A stretch of DNA of 64,000 nucleotides from Penicillus capitatus (taxonomy: Eukaryota > Plantae > Chlorophyta), in NCBI GenBank assembly GCA_965649825.1, contig OZ287708.1:391411-455410 (forward strand). The letters are read 5' to 3'. Below, piece after piece: positions 4,801-59,793 of the stretch. Both the position numbers and the translations under genes were made by a program. The notes below the pieces were generated by a model. It made no database searches. It saw only the letters and a list, made by a program, of their open reading frames with translations, and was not told where the DNA came from. Every line of letters begins with the position of its first letter. Positions within the stretch are counted from its first letter, which is position 1.

Positions 4801-5458
4801 CAATGGCTGCACAGACAGACGAGTGAGTCCGCGAGGCCGATGTAAGACGCGATAGAACTTCGCTAGTTGGAGCGAACGGCGTCTTCCAAAGCACTTACTC
4901 GACGCCGTGCGCGAACGCAAACCGAAACGACGACTCCGCGGCCGTCCGCTTCTCGCAGAAGGCGTCGTTCGGTTCCGCTTTCCATGTTCGAGGGAGTTAG
5001 GACCAACGATAACTCCTCAAACCGACTCGCGTTACACCGCGCAGAACGCTCTCTCGATGGCGTCTGCGACGGAGACGCGTGCAAGAGACAGCCGCCTTGA
5101 CATAGAGTGTGTGCTGCTTTCGCGAAAAAGAATGCCCGCCTCGTTCCTCTGCTAAGGCAACGCGGAGCTGAGCCGAGCGGTTTGCCGTTCGGAGAATCGC
5201 GTCTGAACAGCCGAGGAGAACGCATGCGCGTTACACTCAGAGAGCAGAACGCCGACAAACTGTAGAGAACTTCCTCTGTAAAACTCCTTGCAAGGCATCC
5301 AGAAGCGCTCTCCCGTTCGCGTCGCGCACACCGGTCACAGAATTCTGCTTTTCTGGACGTCTGGCGGCGATTCCCTCGTCCGGCGGCGCATGCAGCGCCG
5401 CCGAACGGCCACGGTTCCCAGCCGCCACCCGCAGGTCGCGCTCGGCAACCGACGCGGC

Positions 5459-5464
5459 TATAAA
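5459..5464 (+). promoter_or_regulatory. TATA box of cassette gene 1
   Basis: CTATAAAGG ~85 nt upstream of the ATG; identical at the same position in all four copies. Confidence 0.65.
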
Positions 5465-5545
5465 GGTCCTGTCACAGACCCTTCCGCACTGTCGACTTTC
5501 CTTGGCGCCTTCCTGTTTTCCGGAGCTCAAGAGAAGAAGAAGACA

Positions 5546-6833
5546 ATGGCTGACGCACGCATGTTCACAGAAGACGACTACGGATATCCTGACAGACCGT
5601 GAGTCCTGTGGCCATTCGTCGACGCGTCGCGCGCTACGGAGCCTTTCGACTGCGGCTGGACACTCTCCATGAACACGCATGTGTCCGGCTGCAGTCGAGA
5701 AGCTCTGCAGCGCGCGACGCGTCGACGAACTCTTCTTCGACTGATCTCTAACTCTTCTGTGTGTTCCCAGTTTCGCCCAGGTCACGTTGAGGGAGGTCCT
5801 GGGCAGTCACCCGCCCAGGGCCTTCGAGGGCTTGGACGAGGCCGCGCGTGTGCAGTTGTATTGGGATTTAAAATCCCGAACAACTGCGCAGAGGGGTCAA
5901 GCGCACATCGATGCGCAGACCCCTCCTGTGCGGTTTGGACCCAATAGGGTCCAAACCCCACAGCCGCGGCCTGTGCGGCGGGCAAGGGTCCTCTCCAGCG
6001 AGGAGAGGAGAGCGCGGCTGGCCCAAGAGGGCCAGCCTGCTGCACCTCCGCCGCCCCAGCGTGTCCCGCCCTATGCGCCGCCTCCGCCGACCTCCGAGCC
6101 TGCCGCACCGCCTCCGTGCAGCCAGCCGCCAGCCCAGCCACCCGTCTCCCAGGTTGGCGCACCACCGGCAGCCTCTCAGCCTGCTGCTCCTCCACCCGTC
6201 TCGGAGCCAGCCCAGGGGCCTGTCGATCCTCAGGCCCAGCCTGCCGCACCGCCTCCAGTCTGTCAAGCGGCCCAGTCTCCCCAGATGGAGTGGTCTTCTG
6301 CGCCGCCAGCTGCGCCGTTTACCCAGCCGCCTGCCAGCTATACTGCCCAGTCGTCAGCCGCCATTCCCGTCGAGTCTCCCCAGATGGAGTGGTCCCCTGT
6401 TCCATTCCCGCAGCCGACCCTCTCTCCGCCTTCTCTGCAGCACAGCCAGACCCCCTTGTTCCCTCCCCGACCGCAGGTTTTCTGCATTCCTGCCTCCCCT
6501 CCCCCCGTAATTCCGTCTCGTCCCTTACTTTTTTCCCTACCTGCTCTTCCATCCCCCTTTCCTAAACGGACATCGCTCTTTTCCCTCCGTCAGCCACCCC
6601 CCATCCCTCCCCGTAACTCTATTTTTCCGGTCAGACGACCTGGATTCCCTCCCCGGCCTTTTTTTATGTCTGGCGAGTGCGTACAGATCTGCCCTCCAGC
6701 CATCCCGCAGCGACTGTTTTTCATGTCAGGAGAATGTGTAAGTAAATCATTCTTTTTAAGTCTCTCTAATGCTATGTTTGCTGTGTAGGTTTCAATCCAG
6801 AACTGGCCTGTATGGGGGGCCAGACCCTTTTGA
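5546..6833 (+). CDS. Orphan Pro-rich cassette protein, copy 1 (exons 5546-5598, 5771-6737, 6789-6833; ~354 aa)
   Basis: Splicing GTGAGT..CCCAG joins MADARMFTEDDYGYPDRP in frame to FAQVTLREVLGSH; intron 2 is GTAAGT..TGTAG (51 nt); splice sites are conserved in 4 copies; synonymous substitutions and in-frame indels between copies. Confidence 0.8.
5615..5729 (+). ncRNA. Intronic long hairpin, candidate miRNA/siRNA precursor (copy 1)
   Basis: Arms 5615-5663 and 5681-5729 pair over 49 nt (4 G-U pairs, 2 A-C mismatches) with a 17-nt loop. Confidence 0.6.
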
Positions 6834-7127
6834 GTTTTTCTAGCTGTCATCTTGGGGGTCAAAAAATTTAAAAAAAACAAAAATTTTTATTTTCTTCTCT
6901 CATATCTCACATTTTTTGCGTGAGATTTTCAGAAAAAAATTTAAAAACAAAAAAAAAAAATAAAAGGGGCTGTTTTCGTTGTTTTGATGTCTCTCTGCCA
7001 TTCCACCTTCGCTCTGCTGTGGTTGGCTGTGTGTTACCTATATTTGCCTGGAGGCTGCTGTGTGCTATCTGCTGTTCTGTTGCACAAAGGATTGTGTGTC
7101 CGACCTGCTGTCGTGATGTTATTGGAG

Positions 7128-7315
7128 GCTGGAGGCTGCTTTACTGTCGTGATGTCATTTGAGGCTGGAGGCTGCTTTACTGTCGTCGTGTCATTGGAGG
7201 CTGGAGGCTGCTTTACTGTCGTCGTGTCATTGGAGGCTGGAGGCTGCTTTACTGTCGTCGTGTCATTGGAGGCTGGAGGCTGCTTTACTGTCGTCGTGTC
7301 ATTGGAGGCTGTAGG
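7128..7315. repeat. 36-bp tandem repeat (GGAGGCTGGAGGCTGCTTTACTGTCGTCGTGTCATT), ~5 units
   Basis: Direct inspection; the same unit occurs at 50920-51190. Confidence 0.95.
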
Positions 7316-7329
7316 CTGGTGTTTACTGT

Positions 7330-8100
7330 CACATGTCATCGGAGGCCCGGAGGCTGGTCAGTACTGTCACATGTCATTGGAGGCCCGGAGGCTGGTCAGT
7401 ACTGTCACATTTCATTGGAGGCCCGGAGGCCCTCGTGGATGTTCCACCTGCTGCCCTGCTGTCGCTGGAGGCCCGGAGGCCCTCGTGGATGTTCCACCTG
7501 CTTCCCTGCTGCCCTGCTGTCGCTGGAGGCCCGGAGGCCCTCGTGGATGTTCTACCTGCTTCCCTGCTGCCCTGCTGTCGCTGGAGGCCCGGAGGACCTC
7601 GTGGATGTTCCACCTGCTGCCCTGCTGCTCTGCTGTCGCTGGAGGCCCGGAGGCCCTCGTGGATGTTCCACCTGCTGCCCTGCTGCCCTGCTGTCGCTGG
7701 AGGCCCGGAGGCCCTCGTGGATGTTCTACCTGCTGCCCTGCTTTCGCTGGAGGCCCGGAGGACCTCGTGGATGTTCCACCTGCTGCCCTGCTGCTCTGCT
7801 GTCGCTGGAGGCCCGGAGGCCCTCGTGGATGTTCCACCTGCTGCCCTGCTGCTCTGCTGTCGCTGGAGGCCCGGAGGCCCTCGTGGATGTTCCACCTGCT
7901 GCCCTGCTGCCCTGCTGTCGCTGGAGGCCCGGAGGCCCTCGTGGATGTTCTACCTGCTGCCCTGCTTTCGCTGGAGGCCCGGAGGACCTCGTGGATGTTC
8001 CACCTGCTGCCCTGCTGCTCTGCTGTCGCTGGAGGCCCGGAGGCCCTCGTGGATGTTCTACCTGCTTCCCTGCTGCTCTGCTGTCGCTGGAGGCCCGGAG
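7330..8100. repeat. 50/58-bp tandem repeat (GCTGGAGGCCCGGAGGCCCTCGTGGATGTTCCACCTGCTGCCCTGCTGTC)
   Basis: Direct inspection; two length variants alternate. Confidence 0.95.
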
Positions 8101-8239
8101 CTCGTTTTGGATGATCTGCACGTCGTCTTGCCGCCACTGGAGGCTGTTAAGGACGTCCTACATTTTTGCGCTTGCAGTCATTAGAGGCCGTTGCTGCTGC
8201 TGGAGGTCGTCAAGAGCGTCCTACCTGACGTCCCGCCGC

Positions 8240-9590
8240 CCCTGGAGGCGGTCTCTGGCGTCGGCTCCGACGTCTGGCCGCCAATGGAGACAGTACCAGG
8301 CGTCCACCCGACATCTGGCCGCCAATGGAGACAGTACCAGGCGTCCACCCGACATCTGGCCGCCAATGGAGGCGGTCTCTGGCGTCCGCTCCGATATCTG
8401 GCCGCCAATGGAGGCGGTCACAGGCGCCCTTCCTACTGTCCCGCCGCCAATGGAGGCGGTCTCTGGCGTCCGCTCCGACGTCTGGCCGCCAATGGAGACA
8501 GTACCAGGCGTCCACCCGACATCTGGCCGCCAATGGAGACAGTACCAGGCGTCCACCCGACATCTGGCCGCCAATGGAGGCGGTCTCTGGCGTCCGCTCC
8601 GATATCTGGCCGCCAATGGAGGCGGTCACAGGCGCCCTTCCTACTGTCCCGCCGCCAATGGAGGCGGTCTCTGGCGTCCGCTCCGACGTCTGGCCGCCAA
8701 TGGAGGCGGTCACAGGCGCCCTTCCTACTGTCTCGCCGCCAATGGAGGCGGTCACAGGCGCCCTTCCTACTGTCCCGCCGCCAATGGAGGCGGTCTCTGG
8801 CGTCCGCTCCGACGTCTGGCCGCCAATGGAGGCGGTCACAGGCGCCCTTCCTACTGTCCCGCCGCCAATGGAGGCGGTCTCCGGCGTCCGCTCCGACGTC
8901 TGGCCGCCAATGGAGGCGGTCTCTGGCGTCCGCTCCGACGTCTGGCCGCCAATGGAGACAGTACCAGGCGTCCACCCGACATCTGGCCGCCAATGGAGGC
9001 GGTCTCTGGCGTCCGCTCCGATATCTGGCCGCCAATGGAGGCGGTCACAGGCGCCCTTCCTACTGTCTCGCCGCCAATGGAGGCGGTCACAGGCGCCCTT
9101 CCTACTGTCCCGCCGCCCCTGTAGACAGTACCAGGCGCCCTTCCTACTGTCTCGCCGCCAACGGAGGCGGTCACAGGCGCCCTTCCTACTGTCTCGCCGC
9201 CCCTGGAGACAGTACCAGGCGTCTACCCGACATCTGGCCGCCAATGGAGGCGGTCTCTGGCGCCCTTCCTACTGTCTCGCCGCCCCTGGAGGCGGTCTCT
9301 GGCGTCCGCTCCGACGTCTGGCCGCCAATGGAGGCGGTCACAGGCGCCCTTCCTACTGTCCCGCCGCCCCTGGAGACAGTACCAGGCGTCTACCCGACAT
9401 CTGGCCGCCAATGGAGGCGGTCTCTGGCGTCCGCTCCGATATCTGGCCGCCAATGGAGGCGGTCACAGGCGCCCTTCCTACTGTCCCGCCGCCAATGGAG
9501 GCGGTCACAGGCGCCCTTCCTACTGTCCCGCCGCCCCTGGAGGCGGTCTCTGGCGTCCGCTCCGACGTCTGGCCGCCAATTGAGGCCGTC
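8240..9590. repeat. 41/42-bp variant minisatellite with constant CCGCCAATGGAG anchor, ~32 units
   Basis: Units fall into types A, B, C and hybrids; a 208-bp higher-order block (A-C-C-A'-B) is duplicated. Confidence 0.95.
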
Positions 9591-9600
9591 AGGGATCACC

Positions 9601-16484: not shown

Positions 16485-17648
16485 TCAGACGTTGAATGGA
16501 ACAGGGTGGGTGCGATCGAATGGCGTGGGCGTCAATGTGATTCCTTCTGTCCTTTCATCACCGAACTTAGATTCTGCTAGCTTTCTCGCATTACTTCGAA
16601 CCAATAGGCAGAGAAAGCAATGCGTTCCCAGCACGACAGCCACCGCCATGGAAACTCCCTTTGCGGCAGGCAACTCATCTTCACATCCCAACATGGTATC
16701 GTCGTCGTCTGGGCACTGAGCTCCGTACATCGATATGGGAACACCGATTGTCCCCACAGCATCGAAGACAGCAGCTGTTGTAGCAAAGACGCGAATGCGT
16801 GAAGTTGCCCATTCCACATTGGGATAACATTCACAGGGCGTCAGGTAGATTGCCCAGAAAGCGAACACTGTGGCAAAAGGTCCCGTCGCAAACATCAGTC
16901 CGAGTGGACCGATATAACCAGCTGACAGCAAGGTCAAAGGAAACGATACCAACAGTACAGCGATCGAGACAACAAAGAGGGCCACCAAGAAAAGCGGACG
17001 CCGTCCGTCCACGGACATCATGCCAGACTTCACTGTCGTTGTATCGGCATCCGATTCGCTCGGCTCAGGCGGCGGCGGTCCAGGAGGGACTTGAGGCTGC
17101 TGAGGGAGATAGGACTGACCTGTTGGCGAGTATCCATAGGCGTTGGCGCCAGAGTAGGGATAGGGATAGTATCCTGGGTATCCACTCTGTGTCGGATACG
17201 GATAGTAACCATACATGTTTGGATAATAGGAGCCTTCGTTAGGTCGTCCATCAGGTGGTGTGCTTTTCTGTGTGGCTAGCTTCTTCTGAGACTTGACTTT
17301 CGAGATGCCTCTCTGCGAAGTCTTCGTTTGCGGAACGACGTTTACAGGTTGGCGACCCTGTTGTCCTTGGTGCCCTTGTCCGCCGAAGTAATATGGTGTG
17401 TACCGGTAGTAAGGAAAAGGATCGCTACCGAATCGAAAAGGGTACACCGTGGCGTTTTGAGGGAACACCCCGGCGTCCAGCTCTCGGTAGAGACGCAACT
17501 GCGAATCTGGCACTTCTGTGCTTCCCGGCTGCAGCAATGAGTCAAGGAGCTGCTCCTGTTCACGGACAGAAGCTTCTCGCGCTCGCTTGGCTCGCATCTT
17601 CCATCGAGGGGCTGGCATCTTGTAGATGAAGAAAAGAGATGATTCCAC
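16485..17648 (-). CDS. Hypothetical membrane protein (Tyr/Pro/Gln-rich N-terminus, ~4 C-terminal TM segments)
   Basis: 387-aa intronless ORF with protein-like composition and four hydrophobic stretches. Confidence 0.75.
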   Translation of the reverse strand: MESSLFFIYKMPAPRWKMRAKRAREASVREQEQLLDSLLQPGSTEVPDSQLRLYRELDAGVFPQNATVYPFRFGSDPFPYYRYTPYYFGGQGHQGQQGRQPVNVVPQTKTSQRGISKVKSQKKLATQKSTPPDGRPNEGSYYPNMYGYYPYPTQSGYPGYYPYPYSGANAYGYSPTGQSYLPQQPQVPPGPPPPEPSESDADTTTVKSGMMSVDGRRPLFLVALFVVSIAVLLVSFPLTLLSAGYIGPLGLMFATGPFATVFAFWAIYLTPCECYPNVEWATSRIRVFATTAAVFDAVGTIGVPISMYGAQCPDDDDTMLGCEDELPAAKGVSMAVAVVLGTHCFLCLLVRSNARKLAESKFGDERTEGITLTPTPFDRTHPVPFNV

Positions 17649-18228
17649 TCGTAGCAGCTAGAGGCGGTGAGGAGTAAGGTGAGAAGTCGAAGGCGACGCC
17701 TCGAAAGGATGAAAGAATCAATGCCGCACCGCACAAATGGCAGCAAGATGACGGGACAGCAAGAGAAGGGACGATGAATCTCGCATTCCCGGTGCCCGCA
17801 CCGGCAGATTGCACGATCCATGCTTCATGTTGCGAACGACCGTGTACACGATTCGGAGAACCGCCTTTCGGGCACAACTGAGTACCGGTTCCAAAACAAG
17901 AGAGCCATCAGACAGTGCAGAAGATGCCTTGTCTCCGCCTGGACCGGAAGACTGTTGTCAGGTGCGCCTCGATGGGACGCCAACGGTTGTATGTATTGCT
18001 TCTGTAGTCTGGCTGTGCCTACTGTGTATGGGATGTCTATCATGAACGCATGAAACAAGCCAAGCTCAATCAGAACGAACCCCATGTACACATACCCTTT
18101 AACATCGTCTCATTCATTGATCTGCACATGATATGTGCGTCAGGCAAAAGAAGCAACGTTAAGTGTTTTTGAAGCCTTCGAACGGGAACTTCGACAAAAA
18201 GCGAATTCCTAACAGCAGAACTCTGGTT

Positions 18229-20606
18229 CTAGTCGTCTCGATCTTTGCATCTGGCCTCGAGGAAATTGGCAAAGGCATAGCAGTCGTCGAATGTTGAAAG
18301 GTATCCCAGTGACAAGCGCACGGATCCGAGAGGAATGTTGACCAGACGGGAGCCGTTATCTAGAGAACCCGTTTTCAGATGACTGTGCTCTGTACTGTCC
18401 ACAGAAGAGAACATAGCAATTTCTTTGGATCTTGAAACTTGTATATACTCGAGTTCATCTTCGCATCCCTCTGTCAATCCAGCGAGGCTTTCGACTTCGG
18501 ATTCCTGAATGCCGATGTAGTTGTATGCCGCACCCGGATTGCATTCAATTCCGGTGCGGACATGAAATCCAGCCTTTGCAGCATCTTTCTCAAATGTCTT
18601 GTAACTCTGCACTTTTCCTTTCGATCCAAGCAGCTCAAAGTTCAGAATGCCTCCCTGTACATCGATGCTGTCGGGCTGTCCATGTTTGCCGAAAATCTTG
18701 ACGATTGGCTTTCCGTTAGAGTGTCGCATGGAACTCAGTCGTTGATGCAGCCATTCGGTAAGTGTATTCACATGTCTCTGAATCGTCAGCATACCTCCAC
18801 ATCTGCTCAGAGCTTCGAATCCGTGCTTCAGTGAGATGATATCCAAGAACGCCACGGTTCCGTCTTCTAATCTCTCCGTCGGACGGCACTTGAGAATATG
18901 GAAATTGTCGTGCGGGGTTGCAAGGGCCACGGAGCCTCCTGCCCAAAAGACCTTTTTCAGGATATCGATATCATCGATCCGCAAGATCAAAGCGCCTAAT
19001 CCAGTGGGATACCCAAACATCTTGTAGAAAGAAATGGCGACGTAGTCTGCGGGAAACTCTCGCAGACTTAGAGGCTGAGTACTCACAAAGGCAGCGGCAT
19101 CCAGCATCACTTTCCATACATCTTGTGATGTGCTCTTTTTCTGAATCTTATCGATCCACGTTAATGGATACTTGACACCGGCGAAGTTTTCTTCGGCCGG
19201 GTAAGCGAAGAGATGGTAGTTTGGTGTGTCGGTCTCTTTGCTGGGTGCTTCGTTTGGCGTCTCGGCAACCCATGCATCCACACCTTCCTCTGTTATATCC
19301 TCATAACTGCCGCCCGATTTGAGCACGTACTCTCGGATACCGAGCACGCTGTTATGGTTTTCCCTCAGATACCGAAAAACACTCTTTTCAGACCAAGGGT
19401 ATGTTTCGCCAATTATTTTCAATGCAGTCGTTGCAGATTTCGTGAAGATAACCTGCATCTCACACACTAGGACGTGGAATAAAAAGAGTGAGCACCCACC
19501 TGGTACTCTCTTGGATCCGCGTCGAAGAAATCCAGCACCATGCGTCGAACTTCTTCGATTCGATCTCTCGAGAGCGAAGACGATGGATTCTCACTGTGAG
19601 GATTGCCAAACATGTTTTCCCTGAAATCCTTCATAATCGCCGTCAACTGCGTCTCAGTATACACAGACGAGCCTGTGTAGTCTAGGTAATGCTGATTGGG
19701 CCCTAGTCTTCTTCCCAGCTCATAGTCATACATTGAATGCAGCAGTCCTCTGTATCCATAAGACGTGCCATACTCGTCCAAAAACTCTTGCCGTGCGCGG
19801 ATCAACTCCTTCGTCCTACGTATCGGCATTGCAGGTGGCTCCATATTTGTCGGTGGGGAAGAAGAAGACTGGACAGGCTCGGATGCCATTTTCTGCTCCA
19901 GTTTCGTCTTGAAATTTTTCAATTCTTCAACAGCCATTTTCATTTCGAACTGCGACTGTGTTGCTTCCACTTTGTTCAAAGCCACGACATATCCATTTGG
20001 ATCCAGTCTGAAATCTTTGTTCGGATCCTCCAAGACCTTCTCGATGTTTGCTCGAAATGTCTTGTGTTTACTGGCTGCCGCTCCAAAGGCCAAGAGCTTT
20101 CTGCCAGCGGTATCATAGATGCTCAGATAAGGGAGCGCTTTGACACCCTGACGCCGTGCATAATCCGCCATTCCATCCACACATGCTCGAATAAATTTCA
20201 CACGTGCGTTTAATGTCGGATCTGCAGCGAGTTCTTTCAGGTGAGGTGACGTCTTTCGGCATCCGTGACACCAAGTGGCAAACCAGTCGACGACACAGAT
20301 CTCATATTCTGGGCATCGAAGAGCCTCTTCCAAAGCAGAATCGGAAGAAACGTCGCACCACAGATCGGCATCTTTCTCCCACCAGAGAGGCGCTTTGGAC
20401 ACTTCGCCAGAGAGACTGAAGAGACGGGATTCGTACAAAGGCGGCGACGCCGTACGCCACTCCACTCCGCGACGCGACCGAAGACCCGTCGCCAGGAATG
20501 CGCGAGAGGGAGGTCGCCGACGGACGACAGGCGAAGCGAAGCAAGGCGAACGTCTCAATCGCGTTGAGACGATGCTCTGCGAAGATCCGATGGCGTAGCT
20601 CTGCAT
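18229..20606 (-). CDS. Thioredoxin-like domain fused to molybdenum-cofactor-sulfurase-like PLP domain (no MOSC domain seen); one ~50-nt intron near 19470-19518
   Basis: Transit-peptide-like N-terminus; VDWFATWCHGC; YLDYTGS; FGNPHS; SFYKMFGYPTGLG (PLP Lys); RTGIECNPGA; GSVRLSLGYLS. Confidence 0.9.
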
Positions 20607-23073: not shown

Positions 23074-24329
23074 CTTGAGCTCAGATGTGATGCACTGAAT
23101 AAGTCGTTTTACGTCGAAAAAATGATTGTTGGCATATTTTCAGACAGCTGCCTCATGGGAATCTAGAGTTATTTAGTACAGAAGATGTCTCACTTCAATT
23201 TAGGCGTTTTACTTTGATGCTGATGAAAACATTAGCAGAGGCCTCTCTTGCGGATTTCTCTAGATTTCTCTACAAATCTTTCTAAAGTTGAACCAACCGT
23301 CCTCACCTCGTCATTCACTCACACTTGATCCAGCAATGAAACAGCCGATGATGTTCCGAAGATCGATAGACGTAGGGAGGGCGTGTACTAAGGCCAGAGT
23401 TGAACGACAGCGCATTCTATGCAGGCAAAAGTTAAGACGAACGACGAAATCCGAGTTTTCCAAGTTTAATGTCGCCGACAGGACATCGGAGTCTCACAGG
23501 AAACCTGAGAACGCACGGAGATCCAAATTGCGAATGTTCTGACCGGACTGAACGAGCAGCCAAGAAGATCCACAACTGTTAGATGGTGTTGCCAAGCACT
23601 GCCCACATCAATATCACATCGATGTCTGCGTGCAAGGAGACGATAAGCTGAGACTAGACAAGAGAACGAATTCCTCCTCGGTTCTCTCAAAGGAGACGGA
23701 GAAGACGCTTCACAAAGAGGCACTGTCCTGCAGACGCGAGCACATCGCCTTGGTTATTACTGCGTCTCATGTGCTGGAACCCGACGGTGAATCGTCGTGG
23801 ATTCTGTTCTTGCCCTTCCAGTGCATCTACGCGAGCGCAATGCTCAGAGAACTGCTGGATGTGGATTCGATGGGCGAATGCGTATCACGTATTCTGTCTA
23901 GCCACCACAGTGCGTCGTTCCACGCTATGGCTGCTGCCCCACCGTCAGTTTCATCTTCTTCCTCGCTATTTTCAGTGGTCTATCGATACGTCCATCCACA
24001 GAGCGCGCTGTAACTTGAACATTTTATGCTTTTACAGTTATGTTCTTCAATCTCGCAAAAACTGCGGTTTCGTTTCTACATCTGTGCTTATTTATCAGAA
24101 ACAGTATCCTACCCAGAGCAAACATCCAAATCAGTCATTTCACAGAACATAGTCGGCAAGGAAAAATGGCCTCTCCTTTCACGAAATCAGCAATTGTATT
24201 TTTCTCGACATGATAGCCTCCACGCAGCCGCTAGGCATCAGGTAGGACGCTCCACGAAAGCCTCCAACCGAATAGAAGGCCTTCATCAGCAGCAAGAGCG
24301 GCAGGTAAGACGACTGCGACCGCCTTCAT

Positions 24330-25530
24330 TGGCAGCCAGACGCCAGGTATGACGCCTTAGACTGTCTCCAGTGGCGGCCAGACGTCGGGGCGGACGCCTC
24401 TGACCGCCTCCATTGGCGGCCAGAAGTCGGAGCGGACGCCTGAGACTGTCTCCAGTGGCGGCGAGACAGTAGGAAGGGTGCCTGAGTGGCTTCATTGGCG
24501 GCCAGACGTCGGGGCGGACGCCTGAGACCGCCTCCAATGGCGGCCAGATGTCGGGGCGGACGCCTGAGACTGTCTCCAGTGGCGGTGAGACAGTAGGAAG
24601 GGTGCCTGAGTGGCTTCATTGGCGGCCAGACGTCGGGGCGGACGCCTGAGACCGCCTCCAATGGCGGCCAGATGTCGGGGCGGACGCCTGAGACCGCCTC
24701 CAATGGCGGCCAGATGTCGGGGCGGACGCCTGAGACCGCCTCCAATGGCGGCCAGATGTCGGGGCGGACGCCTGAGACTGTCTCCAGTGGCGGTGAGACA
24801 GTAGGAAGGGTGCCTGAGTGGCTTCATTGGCGGCCAGACGTCGGGGCGGACGCCTCAGACCGCCTCCAATGGCGGCCAGACGTCGGGGCGGACGCCTCAG
24901 ACCGCCTCCAATGGCGGCCAGACGTCGGGGCGGACGCCTGAGACTGTCTCCAGTGGCGGCGAGACAGTAGGAAGGGTGCCTGAGACCGCCTCCAATGGCG
25001 GCCAGACGTCGGGGCGGACGCCTGAGACCGCCTCCAATGGCGGCCAGACGTCGGGGCGGACGCCTGAGACCGCCTCCAATGGCGGCCAGATGTCGGGGCG
25101 GACGCCTGAGACCGCCTCAAATGGCGGCCAGATGTCGGGGCGGACGCCTGAGACCGCCTCCAATGGCGGCCAGATGTCGGGGCGGACGCCTGAGACCGCC
25201 TCCAATGGCGGCCAGATGTCGGGGCGGACGCCTGAGACTGTCTCCAGTGGCGGCGAAACAGTAGGAAGGGTGCCTGAGTGGCTTCATTGGCGGCCAGACG
25301 TCGGGGCGGACGCCTCAGACCGCCTCCATTGGCGGCCAGAAGTCGGAGCGGACGCCTGAGACTGTCTCCAGTGGCGGCGAAACAGTAGGAAGGGTGCCTG
25401 AGTGGCTTCATTGGCGGCCAGATGTCAGGTAGGACGCATGAGACCGCCTCAAGCGGCGGCCAGACGTCGGGTGGACGCCTGAGACTGCCTCCAGTGGCGG
25501 CGAGACAGTAGGAAGGGCGCCTGAGTATGT
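24330..25530. repeat. 40/42-bp variant minisatellite of copy 2
   Basis: GAGACCGCCTCCAATGGCGGCCAGAYGTCGGGGCGGACGCCT and related unit types. Confidence 0.95.
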
Positions 25531-25739
25531 CTCCAGGAACAAAAAAAAGGTTTCAATAACGGCAAAGTCCTCCAGCAGCAGCGACGGCCTCTGCTCTCAG
25601 GAAGACATCAGGTAGGACGCTCTTGAAGACCTCCGGCAGCAGCAACGGCGTCTAATGGCTGCAAGAGCAAAAAATGTATGATATTCTTTCTGGCCTTCGA
25701 TCGCGTCAAGACGGCGTGCACATCATCCAAAACAACCTC

Positions 25740-26560
25740 CGAGCCTCAAATAGCAGCAGGGCAGCAGGTAAAATCCACGAGGGCCTTCGGGCCTCCAACG
25801 ACAGCAGGGCAGCAGCAGAACATCCACGAGGGCCTCCGGGCCTCCAACGACAGCAGGGCAGCAGCAGAACATCCACGAGGGCCTCCGGGCCTCCAACGAC
25901 AGCAGGGCAGCAGCAGAACATCCACGAGGGCCTCCGGGCCTCCAACGACAGCAGGGCAGCAGCAGAACATCCACGAGTGCCTTCGGGCCTCCAACGACAG
26001 CAGGGCAGCAAGTAGAACATCCACGAGGGCCTTCGGGCCTCCAGCGACAGCAGGGCAGCAGGTAAAGTCACACGAGGACCTCCGGGCCTCCAACGACAGC
26101 AGGGCAGCAGTAGAACATCCACGAGGACCTCCGGGCCTCCAACGACAGCAGGGCAGCAGGTAAAGTCACACGAGGACCTCCAGGCCTCCAACGACACCAG
26201 GGCAGCAGCAGAACATCCACGAGTGCCTTCGGGCCTCCAGCGACAGCAGGGCAGCAGGTAAAGTCACACGAGTGCCTCCGGGCCTCCAACGACAGCAGGG
26301 CAGCAGGTAAAGTCACACGAGGACCTCCGGGCCTCCAACGACAGCAGGGCAGCAGTAGAACATCCACGAGGACCTCCGGGCCTCCAACGACAGCAGGGCA
26401 GCAGGTAAAGTCACACGAGGACCTCCAGGCCTCCAACGACACCAGGGCAGCAGCAGAACATCCACAAGTGCCTTCGGGCCTCCAGCGACAGCAGGGCAGC
26501 AGGTAAAATCCACGAGGGACTCCGGGCCTCCAGCGACAGCAAGACAACAAGAGTGGCAGG
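25740..26560. repeat. ~49-bp tandem repeat of copy 2
   Basis: CAGCAGGGCAGCAGCAGAACATCCACGAGGGCCTCCGGGCCTCCAACGA and variants; near-identical to 50100-50900. Confidence 0.95.
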
Positions 26561-26609
26561 TAGAACATCCAAGAGGGCCTCCATCCTCCAATGACATCAC
26601 GACAGTAAA

Positions 26610-26875
26610 GCAGCCTCCAGCCTCCACTGCTTCATATGGTACACAGCAGCCTCCAGCCTCCACTGCTTCATATGGTACACAGCAGCCTCCAGCCTCCACT
26701 GCTTCATATGGTACACAGCAGCCTCCAGCCTCCACTGCTTCATATGGTACACAGCAGCCTCCAGCCTCCACTTGCTGCATATGGTACACAGCAGCCTCCA
26801 GCCTCCACTTGCTGCATATGGTACACAGCAGCCTCCAGCCTCCACTTGCTGCATATGGTACACAGCAGCCTCCAT
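26610..26875. repeat. 36/37-bp tandem repeat of copy 2
   Basis: CAGCCTCCAGCCTCCACTGCTTCATATGGTACACAG x~4 plus 37-bp variants. Confidence 0.95.
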
Positions 26876-27049: not shown

Positions 27050-28229
27050 TTATATGAAAACCTACAGAAAAACACATTAAAAGAGAGAAGGAAATAAAGA
27101 GTAACTTACACATTGGCCTGACATAAAGAAAAGTCGTTCTGGAATGGCAGGGCCGACCCTAACGCACTGGCCTGACATGAAATACGGCCGGGGAGGGATA
27201 CCGAGGGGCCCGACGGAAAAGACAAAGGGGCGAGGTGGGATTGGAGGGGGACAGGGTAGAGAAAACTGGGAGGTGCGTACAGGAAAGGAAGGTGGGAAAA
27301 AGGGGAATGAAAACTTAAATAGGCGCGAGGGGATGAGTGGAGGCGGGGACGCTGGGATGCAAAACACCTGTGGGCGAGGGGGGAAAGGTGGAGGTTTGAT
27401 GGACTGGGTGACGGAAGCGGGCACTGTCGGGGTCGGCTGGGGAAAGGGACAGGATGACCACTCCATGACAGCTGGACACGGTGGCTGTGATGATTCGGGA
27501 GTCGGTGCGGCTGACTGGGCCTGAGGATGAGCTGCCGGCGGCACTGGCGACCAATCCATCGGCAGAGGCGCGCTCGGCTGGGGTGCTGCTGGCGGCGGCG
27601 ACGCCGGCTGGGCCTGAGGAGTCTCGGCTGGCGCTGGCGCTGGCGCTGGCGGCTGGCTGCTCGGTGGCGGCGCGGCAGGCTCTGAGACTGCAGGCGGCGC
27701 ATAAGCTGGGACGCGCTGCGGAGGCGGCTGAGCAGCAGGCTGGCCCTCTTGGGCCAGCCGCGCTTGCCTCTCTGCAGCCGAGAGGACCCTAGCTCTCCGC
27801 ATGGGCCGCGGCTGTGGGGTTTGGACCCTATTGGGTCCAAACCGCACAGGAGGGGTCTGCGCATCGATGTGCGCTTGACCCCTCTGCGCAGTTGTTCGGG
27901 ATTTTAAATCCCAATACAACTGCGCACGCGCGGCCTCGTCCAAGCCTTCGAAGGCCCTGGGCGGGTGACTGCCCAGGACCTCCCTCAACGTGACCTGGTC
28001 GAATCTAGGAACACACAGAAGAGTTAGAGATCAGTCGAAGAAGAGTTGGTCGACGCGTCGCGCGCTGCAGAGCTTCTCGACTGCAGCCGGACACATGCGT
28101 GTTCATGGAGAGTGTCCAGCCGCAGTCGAGAAGCTCTGCAGCGCGCGACGCGTCGACGAATGGCCACAGGACTCACGGTCTGTCAGGATATCCGTAGTCG
28201 TCTTCTGTGAACATGCGTGCGTCAGCCAT
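27050..28229 (-). CDS. Orphan Pro-rich cassette protein, copy 2 (exons 28229-28177, 28004-27110, 27061-27050; ~319 aa)
   Basis: Same splice sites; 172-nt intron 1 and 48-nt intron 2; open frame; TATA at 28311-28316. Confidence 0.78.
28046..28160 (-). ncRNA. Intronic hairpin, copy 2
   Basis: Stem is nearly perfect (2 G-U pairs, 1 basal mismatch). Confidence 0.6.
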
Positions 28230-37300: not shown

Positions 37301-37480
37301 CCTCATGCAGCCTCCAGAAATCATGTAGTTCGAAAAAGACGGCCTCATGCAGCCTCCAGAAATCATGTAGTTCGGAAAAGACAGCCTCTATGCAGCATCC
37401 AGAGATCAGGTGAGACGGACACGACGGCCTCATGCAGCCGCCAGGCATCAGGTAGTTCGGAAACGACGGCCTTCACGCGG
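34390..37480. repeat. ~3.1-kb 42-bp variant minisatellite of copy 3 with ~120-bp interrupting units and nested higher-order duplications
   Basis: GACGGCCTCATGCAGCCGCCAG-anchored units; blocks 34390-34870 and 35345-35820, and 36940-37200 and 37200-37410, are duplicated. Confidence 0.95.
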
Positions 37481-37880: not shown

Positions 37881-39030
37881 TTATATGAAAACCTACAGAA
37901 AAACACATTGAAAGAGAGAAGGAAATAAAGAGTAACTTACACATTGGCCTGATAGAAAGAAAAGCCGTTCTGGAATGGCAGGACCGATGGGCACACACTG
38001 GCCGGACATGAAATACGGTCTGGGAGGGATACCGAGGGGCCCGACGGAAAAGACAAAGGGGCGTGGTGGGATTGGAGGGGGGCAGGGAAGGGAAAACAGG
38101 GAGGTGCGTACAGGAAAGGAAGGTGGAAAGAAGGGGAATGAAAACTTAAACAGGCGCGAGGGGATGAGTGGAGGCGGGGACGCTGGGATGCAAAACACCT
38201 GTGGGCGAGGGGGGAAAGGTGGAGGCTTGATGGACTGGGTGACGGAAGCGGGCATTGTCGGGGTCGGCTGGGGAAAGGGACAGGATGACCACTCCATGAC
38301 AGCTGGACACGGTGGCTGCGATGATGCTGGAGTCGGTGCGGCTGACTGGGCCTGAGGGTGAGCTGCCGGCGGCACTGGCGACCAATCCATCGGCAGTGGC
38401 GCGCTCAGCTGGGGTGCTGCTGGCGGCGGCGACTCCGGCTGGGCCTGAGGAGTCTCGGCTGGCGGTGGCGGCGCGGCAGGCTCTGAGACTGCAGGCGGCG
38501 CATAAGCTGGGACGCGCTGCGGAGGCGGCTGAGCAGCAGGCTGGCCCTCTTGGGCCAGCCGCGCTTGCCTCTCTGCAGCCGAGAGGACCCTAGCTCTCCG
38601 CATGGGCCGCGGCTGTGGGGTTTGGACCCTATTGGGTCCAAACCGCACAGGAGGGGTCTGCGCATCGATGTGCGCTTGACCCCTCTGCGCAGTTGTTCGG
38701 GATTTTAAATCCCAATACAACTGCGCACGCGCGGCCTCGTCCATGCCCTCGAAGGCCCTGGGCGGGTGACTGCCCAGGACCTCCCTTAACGTCACCTGGT
38801 CGAAACTGGGAACACACAGAAGAGTTAGAGATCAGTCGAAGAAGAGTTGGTCGACGCGTCGCGCGCTGCAGAGCTTCTCGACTGCAGCCGGACGCATGCG
38901 TGTTCATGGAGAGTGTCCAGCCGCAGTCGAGAAGCTCTGCAGCGCGCGACGCGTCGACGAATGGCCACAGGACTCACGGTCTATCAGGATATCCGTAGTC
39001 GTCTTCTGTGAACATGCGTGCTTCGGCCAT
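37881..39030 (-). CDS. Orphan Pro-rich cassette protein, copy 3 (exons 39030-38978, 38805-37941, 37892-37881; ~309 aa)
   Basis: MAEARMFTEDDYGYPDRP; same introns; near-identical to copy 2 with a 30-nt in-frame indel; TATA at 39111-39116. Confidence 0.78.
38847..38961 (-). ncRNA. Intronic hairpin, copy 3
   Basis: As copy 2, with one extra loop-proximal mismatch. Confidence 0.6.
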
Positions 39031-49890: not shown

Positions 49891-50099
49891 CTGAGTATGT
49901 CTCCAGGAACAAAAAAAAAGGTTTCAATAACGGCAAAGTCCTCCAGCAGCAGCGACGGCCTCTGCTCTCAGGAAGACATCAGGTAGGACGCTCTTGAAGA
50001 CCTCCGGCAGCAGCAACGGCGTCTAATGGCTGCAAGAGCAAAAAATGTATGATATTCTTTCTGGCCTTCGATCGCGTCAAGACGGCGTGCACATCATCC

Positions 50100-52120: not shown

Positions 52121-52579
52121 CTGGCGGCTGGGCTGGCGGCTGGGAGGCCGTCGGAAGTGTGCCAGGCTGGGAGACGGGCGGCTGGCGGCTTTGAGGCGGC
52201 GCGGCAGGCTCGGAGGCCGGCTGTGAGACAGGCGGCGGCGGAGCGGGGCGCGCTGGAGGCGGCGGAGCGGCTGGCTGGCCCTGTTGGGCCAGTCGCGCTC
52301 TCCTGTCCTCTGAGGACAGGACCCCGCCCGCCGCACAGGCCGCGGCTGTGGGGTTTGGACCCTATTGGGTCCAAACCGCACAGGAGGGGTCTGCGCATCG
52401 ATGTGCGCTTGACCCCTCTGTGCAGTTGTTCGGGATTTTAGGTCCCAATACAACTGCACACGCGCGGCCTCGTCCAAGCCTTCGAAGGCCCTGGGCGGGT
52501 GACTGCCCAGGACCTCCCTCAACGTCACCTGGTCAAATCTAGGAACACACAGAAGAGTTAGAGATCAGTCGAAGAAGAG

Positions 52580-52694
52580 TTCGTCGACGCGTCGCGCGCT
52601 GCAGAGCTTCTCGACTGCAGCCGGACACATGCGTGTTCATGGAGAGTGTCCAGCCGCAGTCGAAAGGCTCCGTAGCGCGCGACGCGTCGACGAA
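52580..52694 (-). ncRNA. Intronic hairpin, copy 4
   Basis: Same variant as copy 1. Confidence 0.6.
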
Positions 52695-53458
52695 TGGCCA
52701 CAGGACTCACGGTCTGTCAGGATATCCGTAGTCGTCTTCTGTGAACATGCGTGCGTCAGCCATTGTCTTCTTCTTCTCTTGAGCTCCGGAAAACAGGAAG
52801 GCGCCAAGGAAAGTCGACAGTGCGGAAGGGTCTGTGACAGGACCTTTATAGCCGCGTCGGTTGCCGAGCGCGGCCTGCGGGTGGCGGCTGGGAACCGTGG
52901 CCGTTCGGCGGCGCTGCATGCGCCGCCGGACGAGGGAATCGCCGCCAGACGTCCAGAAAAGCAGAATTCTGTGACCGGTGTGCGCGACGCGAACGGGAGA
53001 GCGCTTCTGGATGCCTTGCAAGGAGTTTTACAGAGGAAGTTCTCTACAGTTTATCGGCATGTTCCGCTCTGAGTGTAACGCGCATGCGTTCTCTGCGGCT
53101 GTTCCGACGCGGATCTCCGAACGGCAAACCGCTCGAGTCAGCTCCGCGTTGCCTGGGCAGAGGAACGCGGCGGGCATTCTTTTTCGCGAAAGCAGCAAAC
53201 ACTCTATGTCAAGGCGGCTGTCTCTTGCACGCGTCTCCGTCGCAAACGCCGTAGAGAGAGCGTTCTGCGCGGTGTAACGCGAGTCGGTTTGAGGAGTTGC
53301 CGTTGGCCCTAACTCCCTCGAACATGGAAGGCGGAACCGAACGACGCCCTGCGAGAACCAGACGGCCGCGGAGTCGTCGTTCGGTTCGTGCTCTCGCACA
53401 GCGTCGAGTGAGTGCTTTGGAAGCGCCGTTCGCTCCAACTAGCGAAGTTCTATCGCGT

Positions 53459-54299: not shown

Positions 54300-54457
54300 A
54301 GCTTCTCTTGAGTAATTTAGAAACAAGGCCTTAGATGAACATGCAAAAAGCAGAACTTGCCTGTCTGCGCTCTTCCTTTTTTACATTCGACACCGACTAA
54401 GCTCATCATTCGTTTTTAAACAACCGTTAGCACAGCAAGCATCGTTTGCAAATCGAA

Positions 54458-57370: not shown

Positions 57371-57507
57371 TGCGAATCGAATCGAAACGGAGTGATCGAT
57401 CGAACGATCAAAGACACGATATGCTATTCCCGATCACCGTCGGATTTCGAACGGACCCATCGTCGCAATCGATCAAACGGATCCGTCCAGGTCAGTAGTC
57501 CCGCAAA

Positions 57508-58329: not shown

Positions 58330-58374
58330 CGCTTTTACTGTTGTCTGTCGGGCCATTAACCACGTCACGCAAAA

Positions 58375-59740: not shown

Positions 59741-59793
59741 TCGGAAGAATGACACAATGCTTGGCATTTGTTGTTTGTGCCTATAGTGATCGG

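What the first reader, a model, noticed from the sequence alone, without database searches (positions are those of the whole stretch)
5599..5770. Length-invariant 172-nt intron that is a normal ~57-nt intron plus a 115-nt hairpin (candidate intronic miRNA)
Seen: intron 1 is exactly 172 nt in all four copies. Removing the hairpin leaves 57 nt, close to the size of other introns here. The 3' arm is essentially invariant while the 5' arm varies. Two G-U pairs are kept in every copy, and these would be A-C mismatches on the antisense strand, which favours selection on folding of the sense RNA. Known: Chlamydomonas miRNA precursors are often long intronic hairpins. Inference: a miRNA/siRNA source, a splicing-control structure, or a foldback insertion.
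Basis: partly seen in the sequence, partly recalled or inferred. Interest (0 to 1): 0.8.

Follow-up and report, generated by a model that had tools for sequence, protein, structure and literature searches.

The report
Conserved hairpin intron in algal genes
The 115-nt hairpin in this 172-nt intron is real and is an old, repeatedly re-perfected feature of a green-algal gene family, sitting next to a three-hairpin fold inside the coding exon; nothing here can show whether it makes a microRNA.

Summary
The hairpin is real: 49-nt arms, 17-nt loop, z = -9.9. All four copies of intron 1 are 172 nt, but three lie on the minus strand.

The equal length follows from a roughly 1.1-kb 5' block that is 93-100% identical among the four paralogs. 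The arm asymmetry is not significant (p = 0.36), and it reverses across the wider family.

Fourteen further family members from related algal assemblies carry a homologous hairpin at the same phase-2 intron, which is 164-263 nt long. The apical stem and the 5' arm are conserved almost as well as the exons. Among near-perfect copies, 10 of 49 pairs changed on both sides. At least two independent events re-copied one arm from the other, which looks like template switching.

Exon 2 folds into a closed three-hairpin cloverleaf inside coding sequence. It is 96% paired in 17 genes, and 14 of 46 pairs covary.

No MITE signature, no Rfam membership and no target in the window were found.

Best reading: a conserved structural module of the pre-mRNA, possibly a substrate for a Dicer-like enzyme. 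MicroRNA status cannot be tested here, and the strand that folds is unresolved.

The parts
5599..5770 (+). Intron 1 of paralog c1 (172 nt, phase 2). It has a GTGAGT donor, a CTAAC branch-site motif at 5748-5752 and a CAG acceptor.
   Evidence: Exon 1 and exon 2 join in frame. The conserved 17-aa exon 1 and the AG acceptor occur in all 18 family members.
5615..5729 (+). The 115-nt hairpin of c1: 5' arm 5615-5663, loop 5664-5680, 3' arm 5681-5729.
   Evidence: z = -9.9. Among 7 near-perfect relatives, 10 of 49 pairs changed on both sides.
28005..28176 (-). Intron 1 of paralog c2 (172 nt). The hairpin is at 28046-28160 and has the most perfect stem: a 36-nt exact inverted repeat.
38806..38977 (-). 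Intron 1 of paralog c3 (172 nt). The hairpin is at 38847-38961.
52539..52710 (-). Intron 1 of paralog c4 (172 nt). The hairpin is at 52580-52694, and the intron is identical to that of c1 except at the acceptor (TAG).
5546..5598 (+). Exon 1 of c1, encoding MADARMFTEDDYGYPDR plus 2 nt of the next codon.
   Evidence: The peptide is conserved as M[AST]D..M..E.DYGYP[GD][KR] in 17 of the 18 members; the divergent L001 copy has MDARMFSAEDYCVSGT.
5840..5971 (+). Exon-2 cloverleaf of c1, lying inside coding sequence. It consists of a 7-bp closing stem and three hairpins.
   Evidence: MFE -94.4 kcal/mol, z = -12.5. 46 pairs, 96.3% paired in 17 genes, 14 pairs with changes on both sides, reached by 0 of 500 shuffles. 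Codon-position analysis shows constraint from both coding and pairing.
27804..27935 (-). Exon-2 cloverleaf of c2.
38605..38736 (-). Exon-2 cloverleaf of c3.
52338..52469 (-). Exon-2 cloverleaf of c4.
4888..5985 (+). The homogenised 5' module of c1: promoter, exon 1, intron 1 and the structured start of exon 2. It is 93-100% identical in all four paralogs, while both flanks diverge to 40-80%.
   Evidence: The relationships are mosaic (c1 = c2 far upstream, c1 = c4 near the start, c2 = c3 downstream), which indicates gene conversion.
5377..5407 (+). Promoter palindrome CGTCCGGCGGCGC-ATGCA-GCGCCGCCGAACG, upstream of the TATAAA box at 5459-5464. It lies in a promoter block that is 0.8-0.9 identical across the family.

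Best explanation
WHAT IT IS. The hairpin is an evolutionarily old stem-loop built into intron 1 of a lineage-specific green-algal gene family. It is the first of four conserved stem-loops in the first 430 nt or so of the primary transcript. The other three form a closed cloverleaf inside coding exon 2.

SHOWN HERE.
- The hairpin is homologous in 17-18 genes from the window and from two other assemblies that carry at least two distinct genomes.
- Its apical stem and 5' arm are conserved about as well as the coding exons.
- Pairing in the long stem and in the exon cloverleaf is kept through changes on both sides of a pair.
- The near-perfect 49-bp form seen in this window is a derived, re-perfected state.

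INFERRED.
- Re-perfection happens when one arm is re-copied from the other by replication template switching. This occurred at least twice independently.
- The 172-nt version was then spread to four paralogs by gene conversion of a roughly 1.1-kb 5' module. That is why the four lengths are equal.

PROPOSED MECHANISM (inference). On the pre-mRNA the stem loops out 115 nt, so the remaining 57 nt match the roughly 50-nt introns that this genome normally splices. The stem also presents a long double-stranded RNA, together with the exon hairpins, to a factor that recognises dsRNA. The most likely candidate is an RNase III or Dicer-like enzyme, and the effect would be to tune processing or abundance of the host transcript in cis. 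Small RNAs would be a possible by-product.

My probabilities: about 0.8 that this is a maintained structural element; about 0.3 that Dicer-like processing yields small RNAs.
For: REALITY OF THE HAIRPIN. z = -9.9.

HOMOLOGY. All 18 family members have the same 17-aa exon 1 and a phase-2 intron of 164-263 nt. Each intron contains a hairpin at the same place.

CONSERVATION.
- The 11-bp apical stem is paired in 92% of cells across 18 sequences, against 23-49% when the 3' partners are slid.
- Identity across nine diverse members is 0.63-0.74 for the intron 5' arm and apex, against 0.73-0.75 for the exons.
- In the long stem of 7 near-perfect copies, 92.7% of cells are paired and 10 of 49 pairs changed on both sides. 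None of 500 shuffles reached this, and slid controls gave 0-3.

TEMPLATED RE-COPYING OF AN ARM.
- L005a has an exact 26-nt inverted repeat (10-35 with 116-141), which extends the stem into former flank sequence. Its sister gene L005b has no exact repeat of 8 nt or more. The two are sisters with 100/100 support on the exon-2 tree, and starred branches force at least 2 origins of the near-perfect type.
- In c2 and c3, four clustered transitions within about 10 nt make the 5' arm a perfect complement of the unchanged 3' arm.
- The mechanism is published (PMC8794818, PMC10710096, PMC13100816).

GENE CONVERSION..

NEIGHBOURING STRUCTURE. The exon-2 cloverleaf has 46 pairs, 96.3% paired, and 14 pairs changed on both sides (0 of 500 shuffles). 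For example, the third base of a Gly codon (GGA, GGT or GGC) is matched by the second base of the pairing codon, giving Val, Asp or Gly. Third-codon-position variability falls from 0.94 at unpaired positions to 0.59 at paired ones.

SHORT NORMAL INTRONS. 47-51 nt.

PRECEDENT. In Chlamydomonas, DCL3 processes intronic hairpins and also cleaves mRNAs that carry stem-loops in coding or non-coding exons (PMC4817775).
Against: - No expression, small-RNA or structure-probing data exist for this organism in the tools, so every functional step is inference.
- The strand that folds is unresolved. G-U cells outnumber A-C cells in the exon cloverleaf (25 to 8; 12 pairs to 7) and in the intron apical stem. 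Yet antisense folds are as stable or slightly more stable, and the degenerate lower stems show more A-C than G-U.
- Template switching can mimic compensatory evolution without any selection.
- In imperfect (type B) members, removing the apical hairpin leaves 125-213 nt. Looping out to about 57 nt is therefore not a family-wide requirement.
- The exon hairpins have stems of 6-17 bp, too short for a standard Dicer product.
- It is unknown whether this alga has Dicer or Argonaute genes.
Confidence: 0.5

Rival explanations
1. It is a canonical intronic miRNA or hairpin-siRNA gene acting in trans. A Dicer-like enzyme would cut the 49-bp stem into 20-24-nt duplexes that guide Argonaute to other transcripts.
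For: - The stem is long and nearly perfect, enough for two phased duplexes.
- It sits in an intron of a green alga, which matches Chlamydomonas, where 61% of high-confidence miRNAs come from introns or UTRs (PMC4817775).
- Pairing is maintained among near-perfect copies.
- There is a sub-threshold resemblance to a miRNA covariance model: mir-2576, 52.4 bits, E = 1.2e-7.
Against: - The Rfam score is below the gathering threshold of 83, and the hit is on the strand opposite to the gene.
- Many family members keep only a 16-22 bp apical stem with a bulged lower stem.
- No 21-mer from the hairpin matches elsewhere in the 64-kb window at 3 or fewer mismatches.
- Algal miRNAs are reported as young and not conserved (PMC5511227), whereas this element is family-wide and shared between genomes.
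- There are no small-RNA data, and the RNAi machinery has not been verified in this organism.
Confidence: 0.2
2. It is only a splicing spacer. An insertion into a short intron is tolerated because it folds on itself and keeps the effective distance from the 5' splice site to the branch site near the genome's roughly 50-nt norm. It has no other function.
For: - In near-perfect copies the remainder after the hairpin is 55-63 nt.
- Neighbouring introns are 47-51 nt.
- From my own knowledge, yeast introns use internal stems to shorten the distance between the 5' splice site and the branch point. I did not check this in the paper library.
Against: - A spacer needs its basal pairs. Here the base of the stem is the least conserved part, while the apex and the 5'-arm sequence are the most conserved.
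- Type B and long members leave 125-213 nt outside the hairpin.
- It does not explain the conserved cloverleaf in exon 2.
Confidence: 0.15
3. It is a DNA-level element. The conserved 5' arm would be an intronic transcriptional control region that shares motifs with the promoter. The 3' arm would be a template-switch copy, and the palindromes may also act as hotspots for recombination or gene conversion. RNA folding would be incidental.
For: - The 10-mer CGCGTCGCGC occurs 12 times in the window against 0.4 expected. All 12 are in these four genes: once in each promoter, about 228 nt before the ATG in gene orientation, and once in each hairpin arm.
- The promoter is extremely conserved (0.8-0.9 identity) and has its own invariant palindrome centred on GCATGC.
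- The 5' arm is conserved much better than the 3' arm.
- Fold energies show no strand preference.
- The homogenised block ends just after the last palindrome.
Against: - A binding site does not need 49-bp arms, nor 46 covarying pairs in the adjacent exon.
- G-U outnumbers A-C in the sense orientation in the best-aligned stems.
- The apical stem is kept in all members.
Confidence: 0.12
4. It is a neutral relic: a foldback or MITE transposon, or a chance palindrome, frozen by recent duplication.
For: - The four window copies alone carry no evidence of constraint: 7 of 172 intron sites vary against 20 of 268 exon sites.
- Template switching can create perfect stems in a single step (PMC8794818).
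Against: - There is no target-site duplication.
- There are no gene-independent copies in 280 kb.
- A homologous hairpin sits at the same intron in all 17-18 family members across two further assemblies carrying at least two distinct genomes, with near-exonic conservation of the 5' arm and apex.
Confidence: 0.03

Closest known systems
Intron-derived miRNA and hairpin-siRNA precursors of Chlamydomonas reinhardtii, which depend on DCL3 (Valli et al. 2016, PMC4817775)
   Same: A green alga; a long near-perfect stem-loop inside an intron of a protein-coding gene; the hairpin is set in from the splice sites.
   Different: - No small RNAs have been shown here.
- This hairpin is conserved across paralogs and across genomes, unlike Chlamydomonas miRNAs (PMC5511227).
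- It is accompanied by conserved hairpins inside the coding exon.
Cis-regulatory cleavage of mRNA stem-loops by RNase III enzymes: DCL3 on Chlamydomonas mRNAs and Drosha on DGCR8 mRNA, as discussed in PMC4817775
   Same: Stem-loops within the host transcript, including coding exons, that could let a dsRNA nuclease set the transcript's level.
   Different: The exon stems here are 6-17 bp and form a closed multi-branch fold rather than one long hairpin. No cleavage data exist.
Structured introns that shorten the distance from the 5' splice site to the branch point, as in budding yeast (my own knowledge; not checked in the paper library)
   Same: An internal stem loops out most of an over-long intron, leaving about 57 nt in a genome whose introns are about 50 nt.
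   Different: Conservation is strongest at the apex and in the 5'-arm sequence, not at the base of the stem. Many family members leave more than 120 nt unlooped.
Hairpins created and maintained by replication template switching (PMC8794818, PMC10710096, PMC13100816)
   Same: - Multi-base changes that make one arm the exact reverse complement of the other.
- Extension of the stem into former flank sequence (L005a).
- Clustered compensatory changes (c2 and c3).
   Different: Those papers infer events from reconstructed ancestors. Here the inference rests on sister-paralog comparisons only, without a formal ancestral reconstruction.
MITE or foldback transposable elements
   Same: A roughly 115-nt perfect or near-perfect inverted repeat inside an intron.
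   Different: There is no target-site duplication and there are no dispersed copies. The hairpin always sits at the same position of the same intron in one gene family.
Mirtrons
   Same: An intronic hairpin.
   Different: The ends of the hairpin do not coincide with the splice sites: there are 16 nt of flank on the 5' side and 41 nt on the 3' side.

Membership tests
miRNA precursor (plant and algal annotation criteria) | A single-stranded hairpin whose duplex region has few mismatches and no large bulges. | tested here: met
   The arms are 49 bp. Copy 1 and copy 4 have 2 mismatches and 4 G-U pairs; copies 2 and 3 have a 36-nt exact inverted repeat.
miRNA precursor (plant and algal annotation criteria) | A discrete 20-24-nt miRNA/miRNA* duplex with 2-nt 3' overhangs in small-RNA reads. 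| not testable with these tools
   No small-RNA data are available.
miRNA precursor (plant and algal annotation criteria) | Dependence on a Dicer-like enzyme, and presence of DCL and AGO genes in the genome. | not tested
   Only 64 kb of the genome is held, and neither gene lies in the window.
miRNA precursor (plant and algal annotation criteria) | A complementary target transcript. | tested here: inconclusive
   No 21-mer from either arm matches anything outside the four introns at 3 or fewer mismatches, but only this 64-kb window could be searched.
Rfam mir-2576 (best Rfam match) | A score at or above the family's gathering threshold of 83 bits. | tested here: not met
   52.4 bits, on the strand opposite to the gene. 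No other family came closer.
MITE or foldback element | A target-site duplication flanking the inverted repeat. | tested here: not met
   The flanks are ...GTGGCCA on one side and CTCTTCT... on the other.
MITE or foldback element | Multiple copies that are independent of any one gene. | tested here: not met
   All matches in 64 kb plus about 216 kb lie in intron 1 of this family. The whole genome could not be searched.
Mirtron | The ends of the hairpin are defined by the splice sites. | tested here: not met
   The hairpin occupies intron positions 17-131 of 172.
Loop-out structured intron (splice-site approximation) | A stem whose base brings the 5' splice site and the branch site to the normal intron distance in all members. 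| tested here: inconclusive
   Met in near-perfect copies, where 55-63 nt remain. Not met in type B and long members, where 125-213 nt remain.
Conserved cis-acting RNA structure (covariation standard) | Pairs kept through changes on both sides, beyond shuffled and slid controls. | tested here: met
   - Long intron stem: 10 of 49 pairs, reached by 0 of 500 shuffles.
- Exon cloverleaf: 14 of 46 pairs, reached by 0 of 500 shuffles.
- Intron apical stem across all 18 sequences: only 2 pairs, no better than shuffles.
- Template switching is an alternative source of such changes.
Intronic snoRNA | C/D or H/ACA box architecture, or a match to an Rfam snoRNA model. | tested here: not met
   There were only chance-level snoRNA hits (E of 0.24 or more), and they lie outside the hairpin.

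The most novel reading that the evidence does not exclude
The intron hairpin and the exon-2 cloverleaf together would form a previously undescribed cis-regulatory RNA domain at the 5' end of a green-algal gene family. In it, base pairing is selected strongly enough to dictate amino-acid changes in the encoded protein. Stem perfection would be renewed by template switching, and the whole module would be kept uniform among paralogs by gene conversion. It could act as a platform for a dsRNA-recognising enzyme that gates expression of the family.
Probability: 0.35. Interest if true: 0.8.

Novelty: new variant of a known kind. Interest (0 to 1): 0.6.

Why it matters
Intronic hairpins in green algae are usually treated as young small-RNA loci that turn over quickly. 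This one is old and specific to one gene family. It is also coupled to a covarying fold inside the coding sequence, where RNA or DNA pairing visibly overrides the choice of amino acid. That is a rare, clean case of dual coding.

The family also offers natural before-and-after pairs (L005a against L005b; c2 and c3 against c1 and c4) for the idea that replication template switching creates and repairs hairpins.

If the module proves to be a Dicer-like or splicing control element, it would give a tractable example of how structured pre-mRNA regulates a rapidly evolving repeat-protein family in an alga with very short introns.

Tried and rejected
- Same-strand alignment of the four copies. It was misleading because the palindrome aligns to itself. 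Realigning with three copies reverse-complemented fixed it.
- Rfam at a permissive E-value. It gave only sub-threshold miRNA-model hits typical of any long GC-rich hairpin, and no snoRNA or other family.
- Pfam on the N-terminal 356 aa: no family.
- MITE test. There is no target-site duplication, and hairpin-only blastn, pattern search and inverted-repeat scans found nothing outside the family.
- Trans-target scan with 21-mers: none in the window.
- Strand of selection by fold energy: inconclusive, with the antisense strand equal or slightly better.
- G-U against A-C counts on an arm-to-arm alignment of the degenerate copies: unreliable, because there are too many gaps and transversions.
- RNAalifold on the plain MAFFT intron alignment. 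It recovers only the apical stem because the 3' arms carry a roughly 16-nt insertion in type B copies.
- Regex survey of intron lengths: too few canonical donors to give a distribution. It did locate intron 2 of the family (48-51 nt).
- Syntenic ortholog in a related genome (L001). It carries a much more diverged copy with a 234-nt intron and only a 13-bp central hairpin, so it could not serve as a simple outgroup.
- JGI metagenome scans by DNA pattern and by protein profile: no relatives.
- A covariance model of the cloverleaf (R1) found only the 18 known members in 280 kb.
Full report
WHERE WE ARE.
The window comes from a green alga. An aspartate kinase / homoserine dehydrogenase ORF at 56129-57370 (-) has Raphidocelis (65%) and Edaphochlamys (58%) as its best named relatives. 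An unnamed ENA assembly gives a 94% relative. Genes here have very short introns: 47 nt in the aspartate kinase gene.

The finding lies in the first intron of a gene present four times in the window. Each copy has a TATA-box promoter, a 53-nt first coding exon, the intron, and then a long proline-rich ORF followed by tandem arrays of 36-, 42-, 49- and 58-nt units. The protein has no Pfam domain.

CHECKING THE OBSERVATION.
The hairpin is real. Its arms are at 5615-5663 and 5681-5729: 49 nt each, 88% complementary, with a 17-nt loop. The intron's MFE is -99.7 kcal/mol against -58.6 +/- 4.1 for shuffles, z = -9.9. All four introns are exactly 172 nt with GTGAGT...YAG ends, and 172 minus 115 is 57 nt. 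That is close to the 47-51-nt introns nearby. The two G-U pairs exist in every copy.

Four corrections are needed:
1. Only copy 1 is on the + strand. Copies 2-4 are at 28005-28176, 38806-38977 and 52539-52710 on the - strand. A same-strand alignment hides this because the palindrome aligns with itself.
2. The equal length carries no information. A block of about 1.1 kb (4888-5985 in copy 1) is 93-100% identical in all four copies, while both flanks fall to 40-80%. The nearest relative changes along the block, which is the mark of gene conversion. From exon 1 to exon 2 +215 there is no indel at all. The intron has 7 variable sites in 172 nt against 20 in 268 nt in the adjoining exons.
3. The arm asymmetry amounts to 4 against 1-2 sites (Fisher p = 0.36). 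All four 5'-arm sites share a single split, c1 = c4 against c2 = c3.
4. Fold energies of the two strands differ by 3.3 kcal/mol or less, in either direction.

RELATIVES FROM ELSEWHERE.
A syntenic stretch of a related genome (L001, about 85% nucleotide identity in the flanking genes) has one diverged copy where the window has copy 4. It has nothing where copies 2 and 3 lie, so the cluster expanded recently.

A protein search with the conserved start of exon 2 found 18 unnamed ENA proteins. Fetching their contigs gave 14 further genes from two other assemblies. All 18 genes share the 17-aa exon 1 and a phase-2 intron at the same place, but its length ranges from 164 to 263 nt. Every one has a hairpin at the homologous position.

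Two forms exist:
- Type A is near-perfect, with 44-58 bp. It comprises the four window copies, L002, L012a, L012b and L005a.
- Type B has a 16-22-bp apical stem (29-41 bp in L005b, L008 and L009) over a bulged lower stem. Its 3' arm carries an extra 16 nt or so.

HOW CONSERVED IT IS.
Across nine diverse members, the 5' arm and apex of the intron are 0.63-0.74 identical. That nearly matches the coding exons (0.73-0.75).

The 11-bp apical stem is paired in 92% of cells across all 18 sequences, against 23-49% when the partners are slid. It shows little two-sided change. Within the seven distinct type A sequences, 92.7% of cells are paired and 10 of 49 pairs changed on both sides. No shuffle out of 500 reached this, and slid controls gave 0-3.

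HOW THE PERFECT STEM ARISES.
L005a and L005b are sister genes with 100/100 support on the exon-2 tree. L005a has an exact 26-nt inverted repeat (10-35 with 116-141) that even extends the stem into former flank sequence. L005b has no exact repeat of 8 nt or more. The two differ by a roughly 20-nt replaced block in the 3' arm.

In the window, copies 2 and 3 differ from copies 1 and 4 by four clustered transitions that make the 5' arm the exact complement of the unchanged 3' arm. Relatives show that the c1/c4 state is the older one.

Both patterns are what replication template switching produces. It is reported to create perfect stems, fix existing ones, and homogenise and expand inverted-repeat arms (PMC8794818, PMC10710096, PMC13100816). 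I infer at least two independent re-perfections. I did not run a formal ancestral reconstruction.

THE LARGER CONTEXT.
While reading exon 2, I found that codons 23-66 or so fold into a closed cloverleaf: a 7-bp closing stem plus three hairpins, at 5840-5971 in copy 1. Its MFE is -94.4 kcal/mol, z = -12.5.

The 175-column alignment of 17 genes has no gaps. Its 46 consensus pairs are 96.3% paired, against 25-48% when slid. Fourteen pairs changed on both sides, reached by 0 of 500 shuffles, and slid controls gave 1-4. Individual pairs show up to five pair types.

The sequence is also coding. At unpaired positions the variable fractions by codon position are 0.77, 0.46 and 0.94. At paired positions they drop to 0.31, 0.38 and 0.59. 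Synonymous changes in one arm (Gly GGA, GGT or GGC) are matched by non-synonymous changes in the other (Val, Asp or Gly). Within the window itself, one pair is U-G in c1, C-G in c2 and c3, and U-A in c4.

A covariance model of this fold finds only the 18 family members in 280 kb. Rfam has nothing for it.

The intron hairpin is therefore the first of four conserved stem-loops in the 5' part of the transcript. The homogenised block ends just after the last of them.

WHICH STRAND AND WHICH MOLECULE.
This is unresolved. G-U cells outnumber A-C cells in the cloverleaf (25 to 8; 12 pairs to 7) and in the intron apical stem, which leans towards sense RNA. Against that, antisense folds are as stable or slightly more stable, and template switching or transcription-linked mutation bias could skew the counts.

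A DNA-level reading is not excluded:
- The promoter is 0.8-0.9 identical across the family and has its own palindrome.
- The 10-mer CGCGTCGCGC occurs 12 times against 0.4 expected, only in these genes: in each promoter and in both hairpin arms.

WHAT IT IS NOT.
- It is not a MITE or foldback element. There is no target-site duplication, and all matches lie in intron 1 of this family.
- It is not a mirtron. The hairpin has flanks of 16 and 41 nt inside the intron.
- It is not a member of any Rfam family. The best hit is mir-2576 at 52.4 bits against a threshold of 83, on the opposite strand.
- It has no target in the window for any 21-mer at 3 or fewer mismatches.

MOST LIKELY MECHANISM.
I commit to a maintained structural module of the pre-mRNA. 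The stem loops out 115 nt, so the rest of the intron has the size this alga splices. It also offers a long duplex, beside the exon hairpins, to a dsRNA-recognising factor. The best precedent is Chlamydomonas DCL3, which processes intronic hairpins and also cleaves mRNAs that carry stem-loops in coding or non-coding exons (PMC4817775).

What is shown: homology, conservation, covariation, recent homogenisation, and signatures of arm re-copying. What is inferred: the RNA level, the partner enzyme, and any small RNA.

Overall confidence in this package is about 0.5. Confidence that it is a maintained structure is about 0.8, and that small RNAs are produced about 0.3. The rivals are a trans-acting miRNA (0.2), a pure splicing spacer (0.15), a DNA-level control or recombination element (0.12) and a neutral relic (0.03).

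COMPARISON WITH WHAT IS KNOWN, AND NOVELTY.
It works most like the intron-derived hairpin precursors and DCL3-cleaved mRNA stem-loops of Chlamydomonas. Membership cannot be claimed, because small RNAs, Dicer dependence and targets are all untested or inconclusive.

It differs in three ways: it is conserved across paralogs and genomes (algal miRNAs are reported not to be, PMC5511227); it is coupled to a coding-region cloverleaf; and it shows repeated re-perfection. I rate it a new variant of a known kind, interest 0.6.

The bolder reading is a new cis-regulatory RNA domain that spans an intron and a coding exon and overrides protein sequence. I give that a probability of 0.35 and, if true, an interest of 0.8.

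Noticed in passing
window 5840-5971 (+); 27804-27935, 38605-38736 and 52338-52469 (-): A closed three-hairpin cloverleaf lies inside coding exon 2. It is 96% paired in 17 genes, 14 of 46 pairs changed on both sides, and pairing dictates some amino-acid changes. This is arguably more remarkable than the intron hairpin.
   Followed up: yes
window 5200-5545 and the equivalent regions of c2-c4: The promoter is conserved across the whole family, at 0.8-0.9 identity from about -150 to -60. It includes an invariant palindrome, CGGCGGCGC-ATGCA-GCGCCGCCG, upstream of the TATAAA box. The 10-mer CGCGTCGCGC occurs only in these promoters and in both hairpin arms (12 hits against 0.4 expected). GCATGC-type motifs recur in the promoter and at the hairpin apex.
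   Followed up: partly
window 4888-5985 against its flanks, and the equivalent regions of c2-c4: The four paralogs have mosaic relationships: c1 = c2 far upstream, c1 = c4 near the start, and c2 = c3 and c1 = c4 downstream. A 93-100% identical 5' module sits between flanks of 40-80% identity, which implies recent gene conversion limited to the palindrome-rich 5' end.
   Followed up: partly
window 7108-9591, 24309-26874, 34405-37472, 48094-51187: The gene bodies hold long tandem arrays with periods of 36, 42, 49 and 58 nt. The 49- and 58-nt periods are not multiples of three, and all three frames stay open across them. It is unclear how much of these arrays is coding.
   Followed up: no
window 48759-49117: A series of roughly 27-nt palindromic units (GCCGCCTTGC-ATCCATG-GCAAGGCGGC and variants) is repeated inside the body of paralog c4. 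It is the only other cluster of long inverted repeats in the window.
   Followed up: no
L001 13006-21383 against window 54366-22901: A related genome has a single, much more diverged family member (52% amino-acid identity, 234-nt intron, 13-bp central hairpin) where the window has c4. It has only about 0.8 kb where the window has about 21 kb containing c2 and c3. The tandem cluster therefore expanded after the split, or the syntenic copy was overwritten by conversion.
   Followed up: partly
window 5615-5640 and the mirror sequence in the 3' arm: Each arm is a run of back-to-back 6-bp palindromes (GTCGAC, ACGCGT, GCGCGC, CTGCAG) and is very CpG-dense. It looks like a cloning polylinker, but it is natural: it varies among independent wild assemblies.
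   Followed up: partly
window 16485-20606 and 54400-62556: The neighbouring genes look like ordinary housekeeping genes. They are a fused thioredoxin-like and molybdenum-cofactor-sulfurase-like ORF pair, an aspartate kinase / homoserine dehydrogenase with a 47-nt intron, and an organellar-type IF-2.
   Followed up: partly
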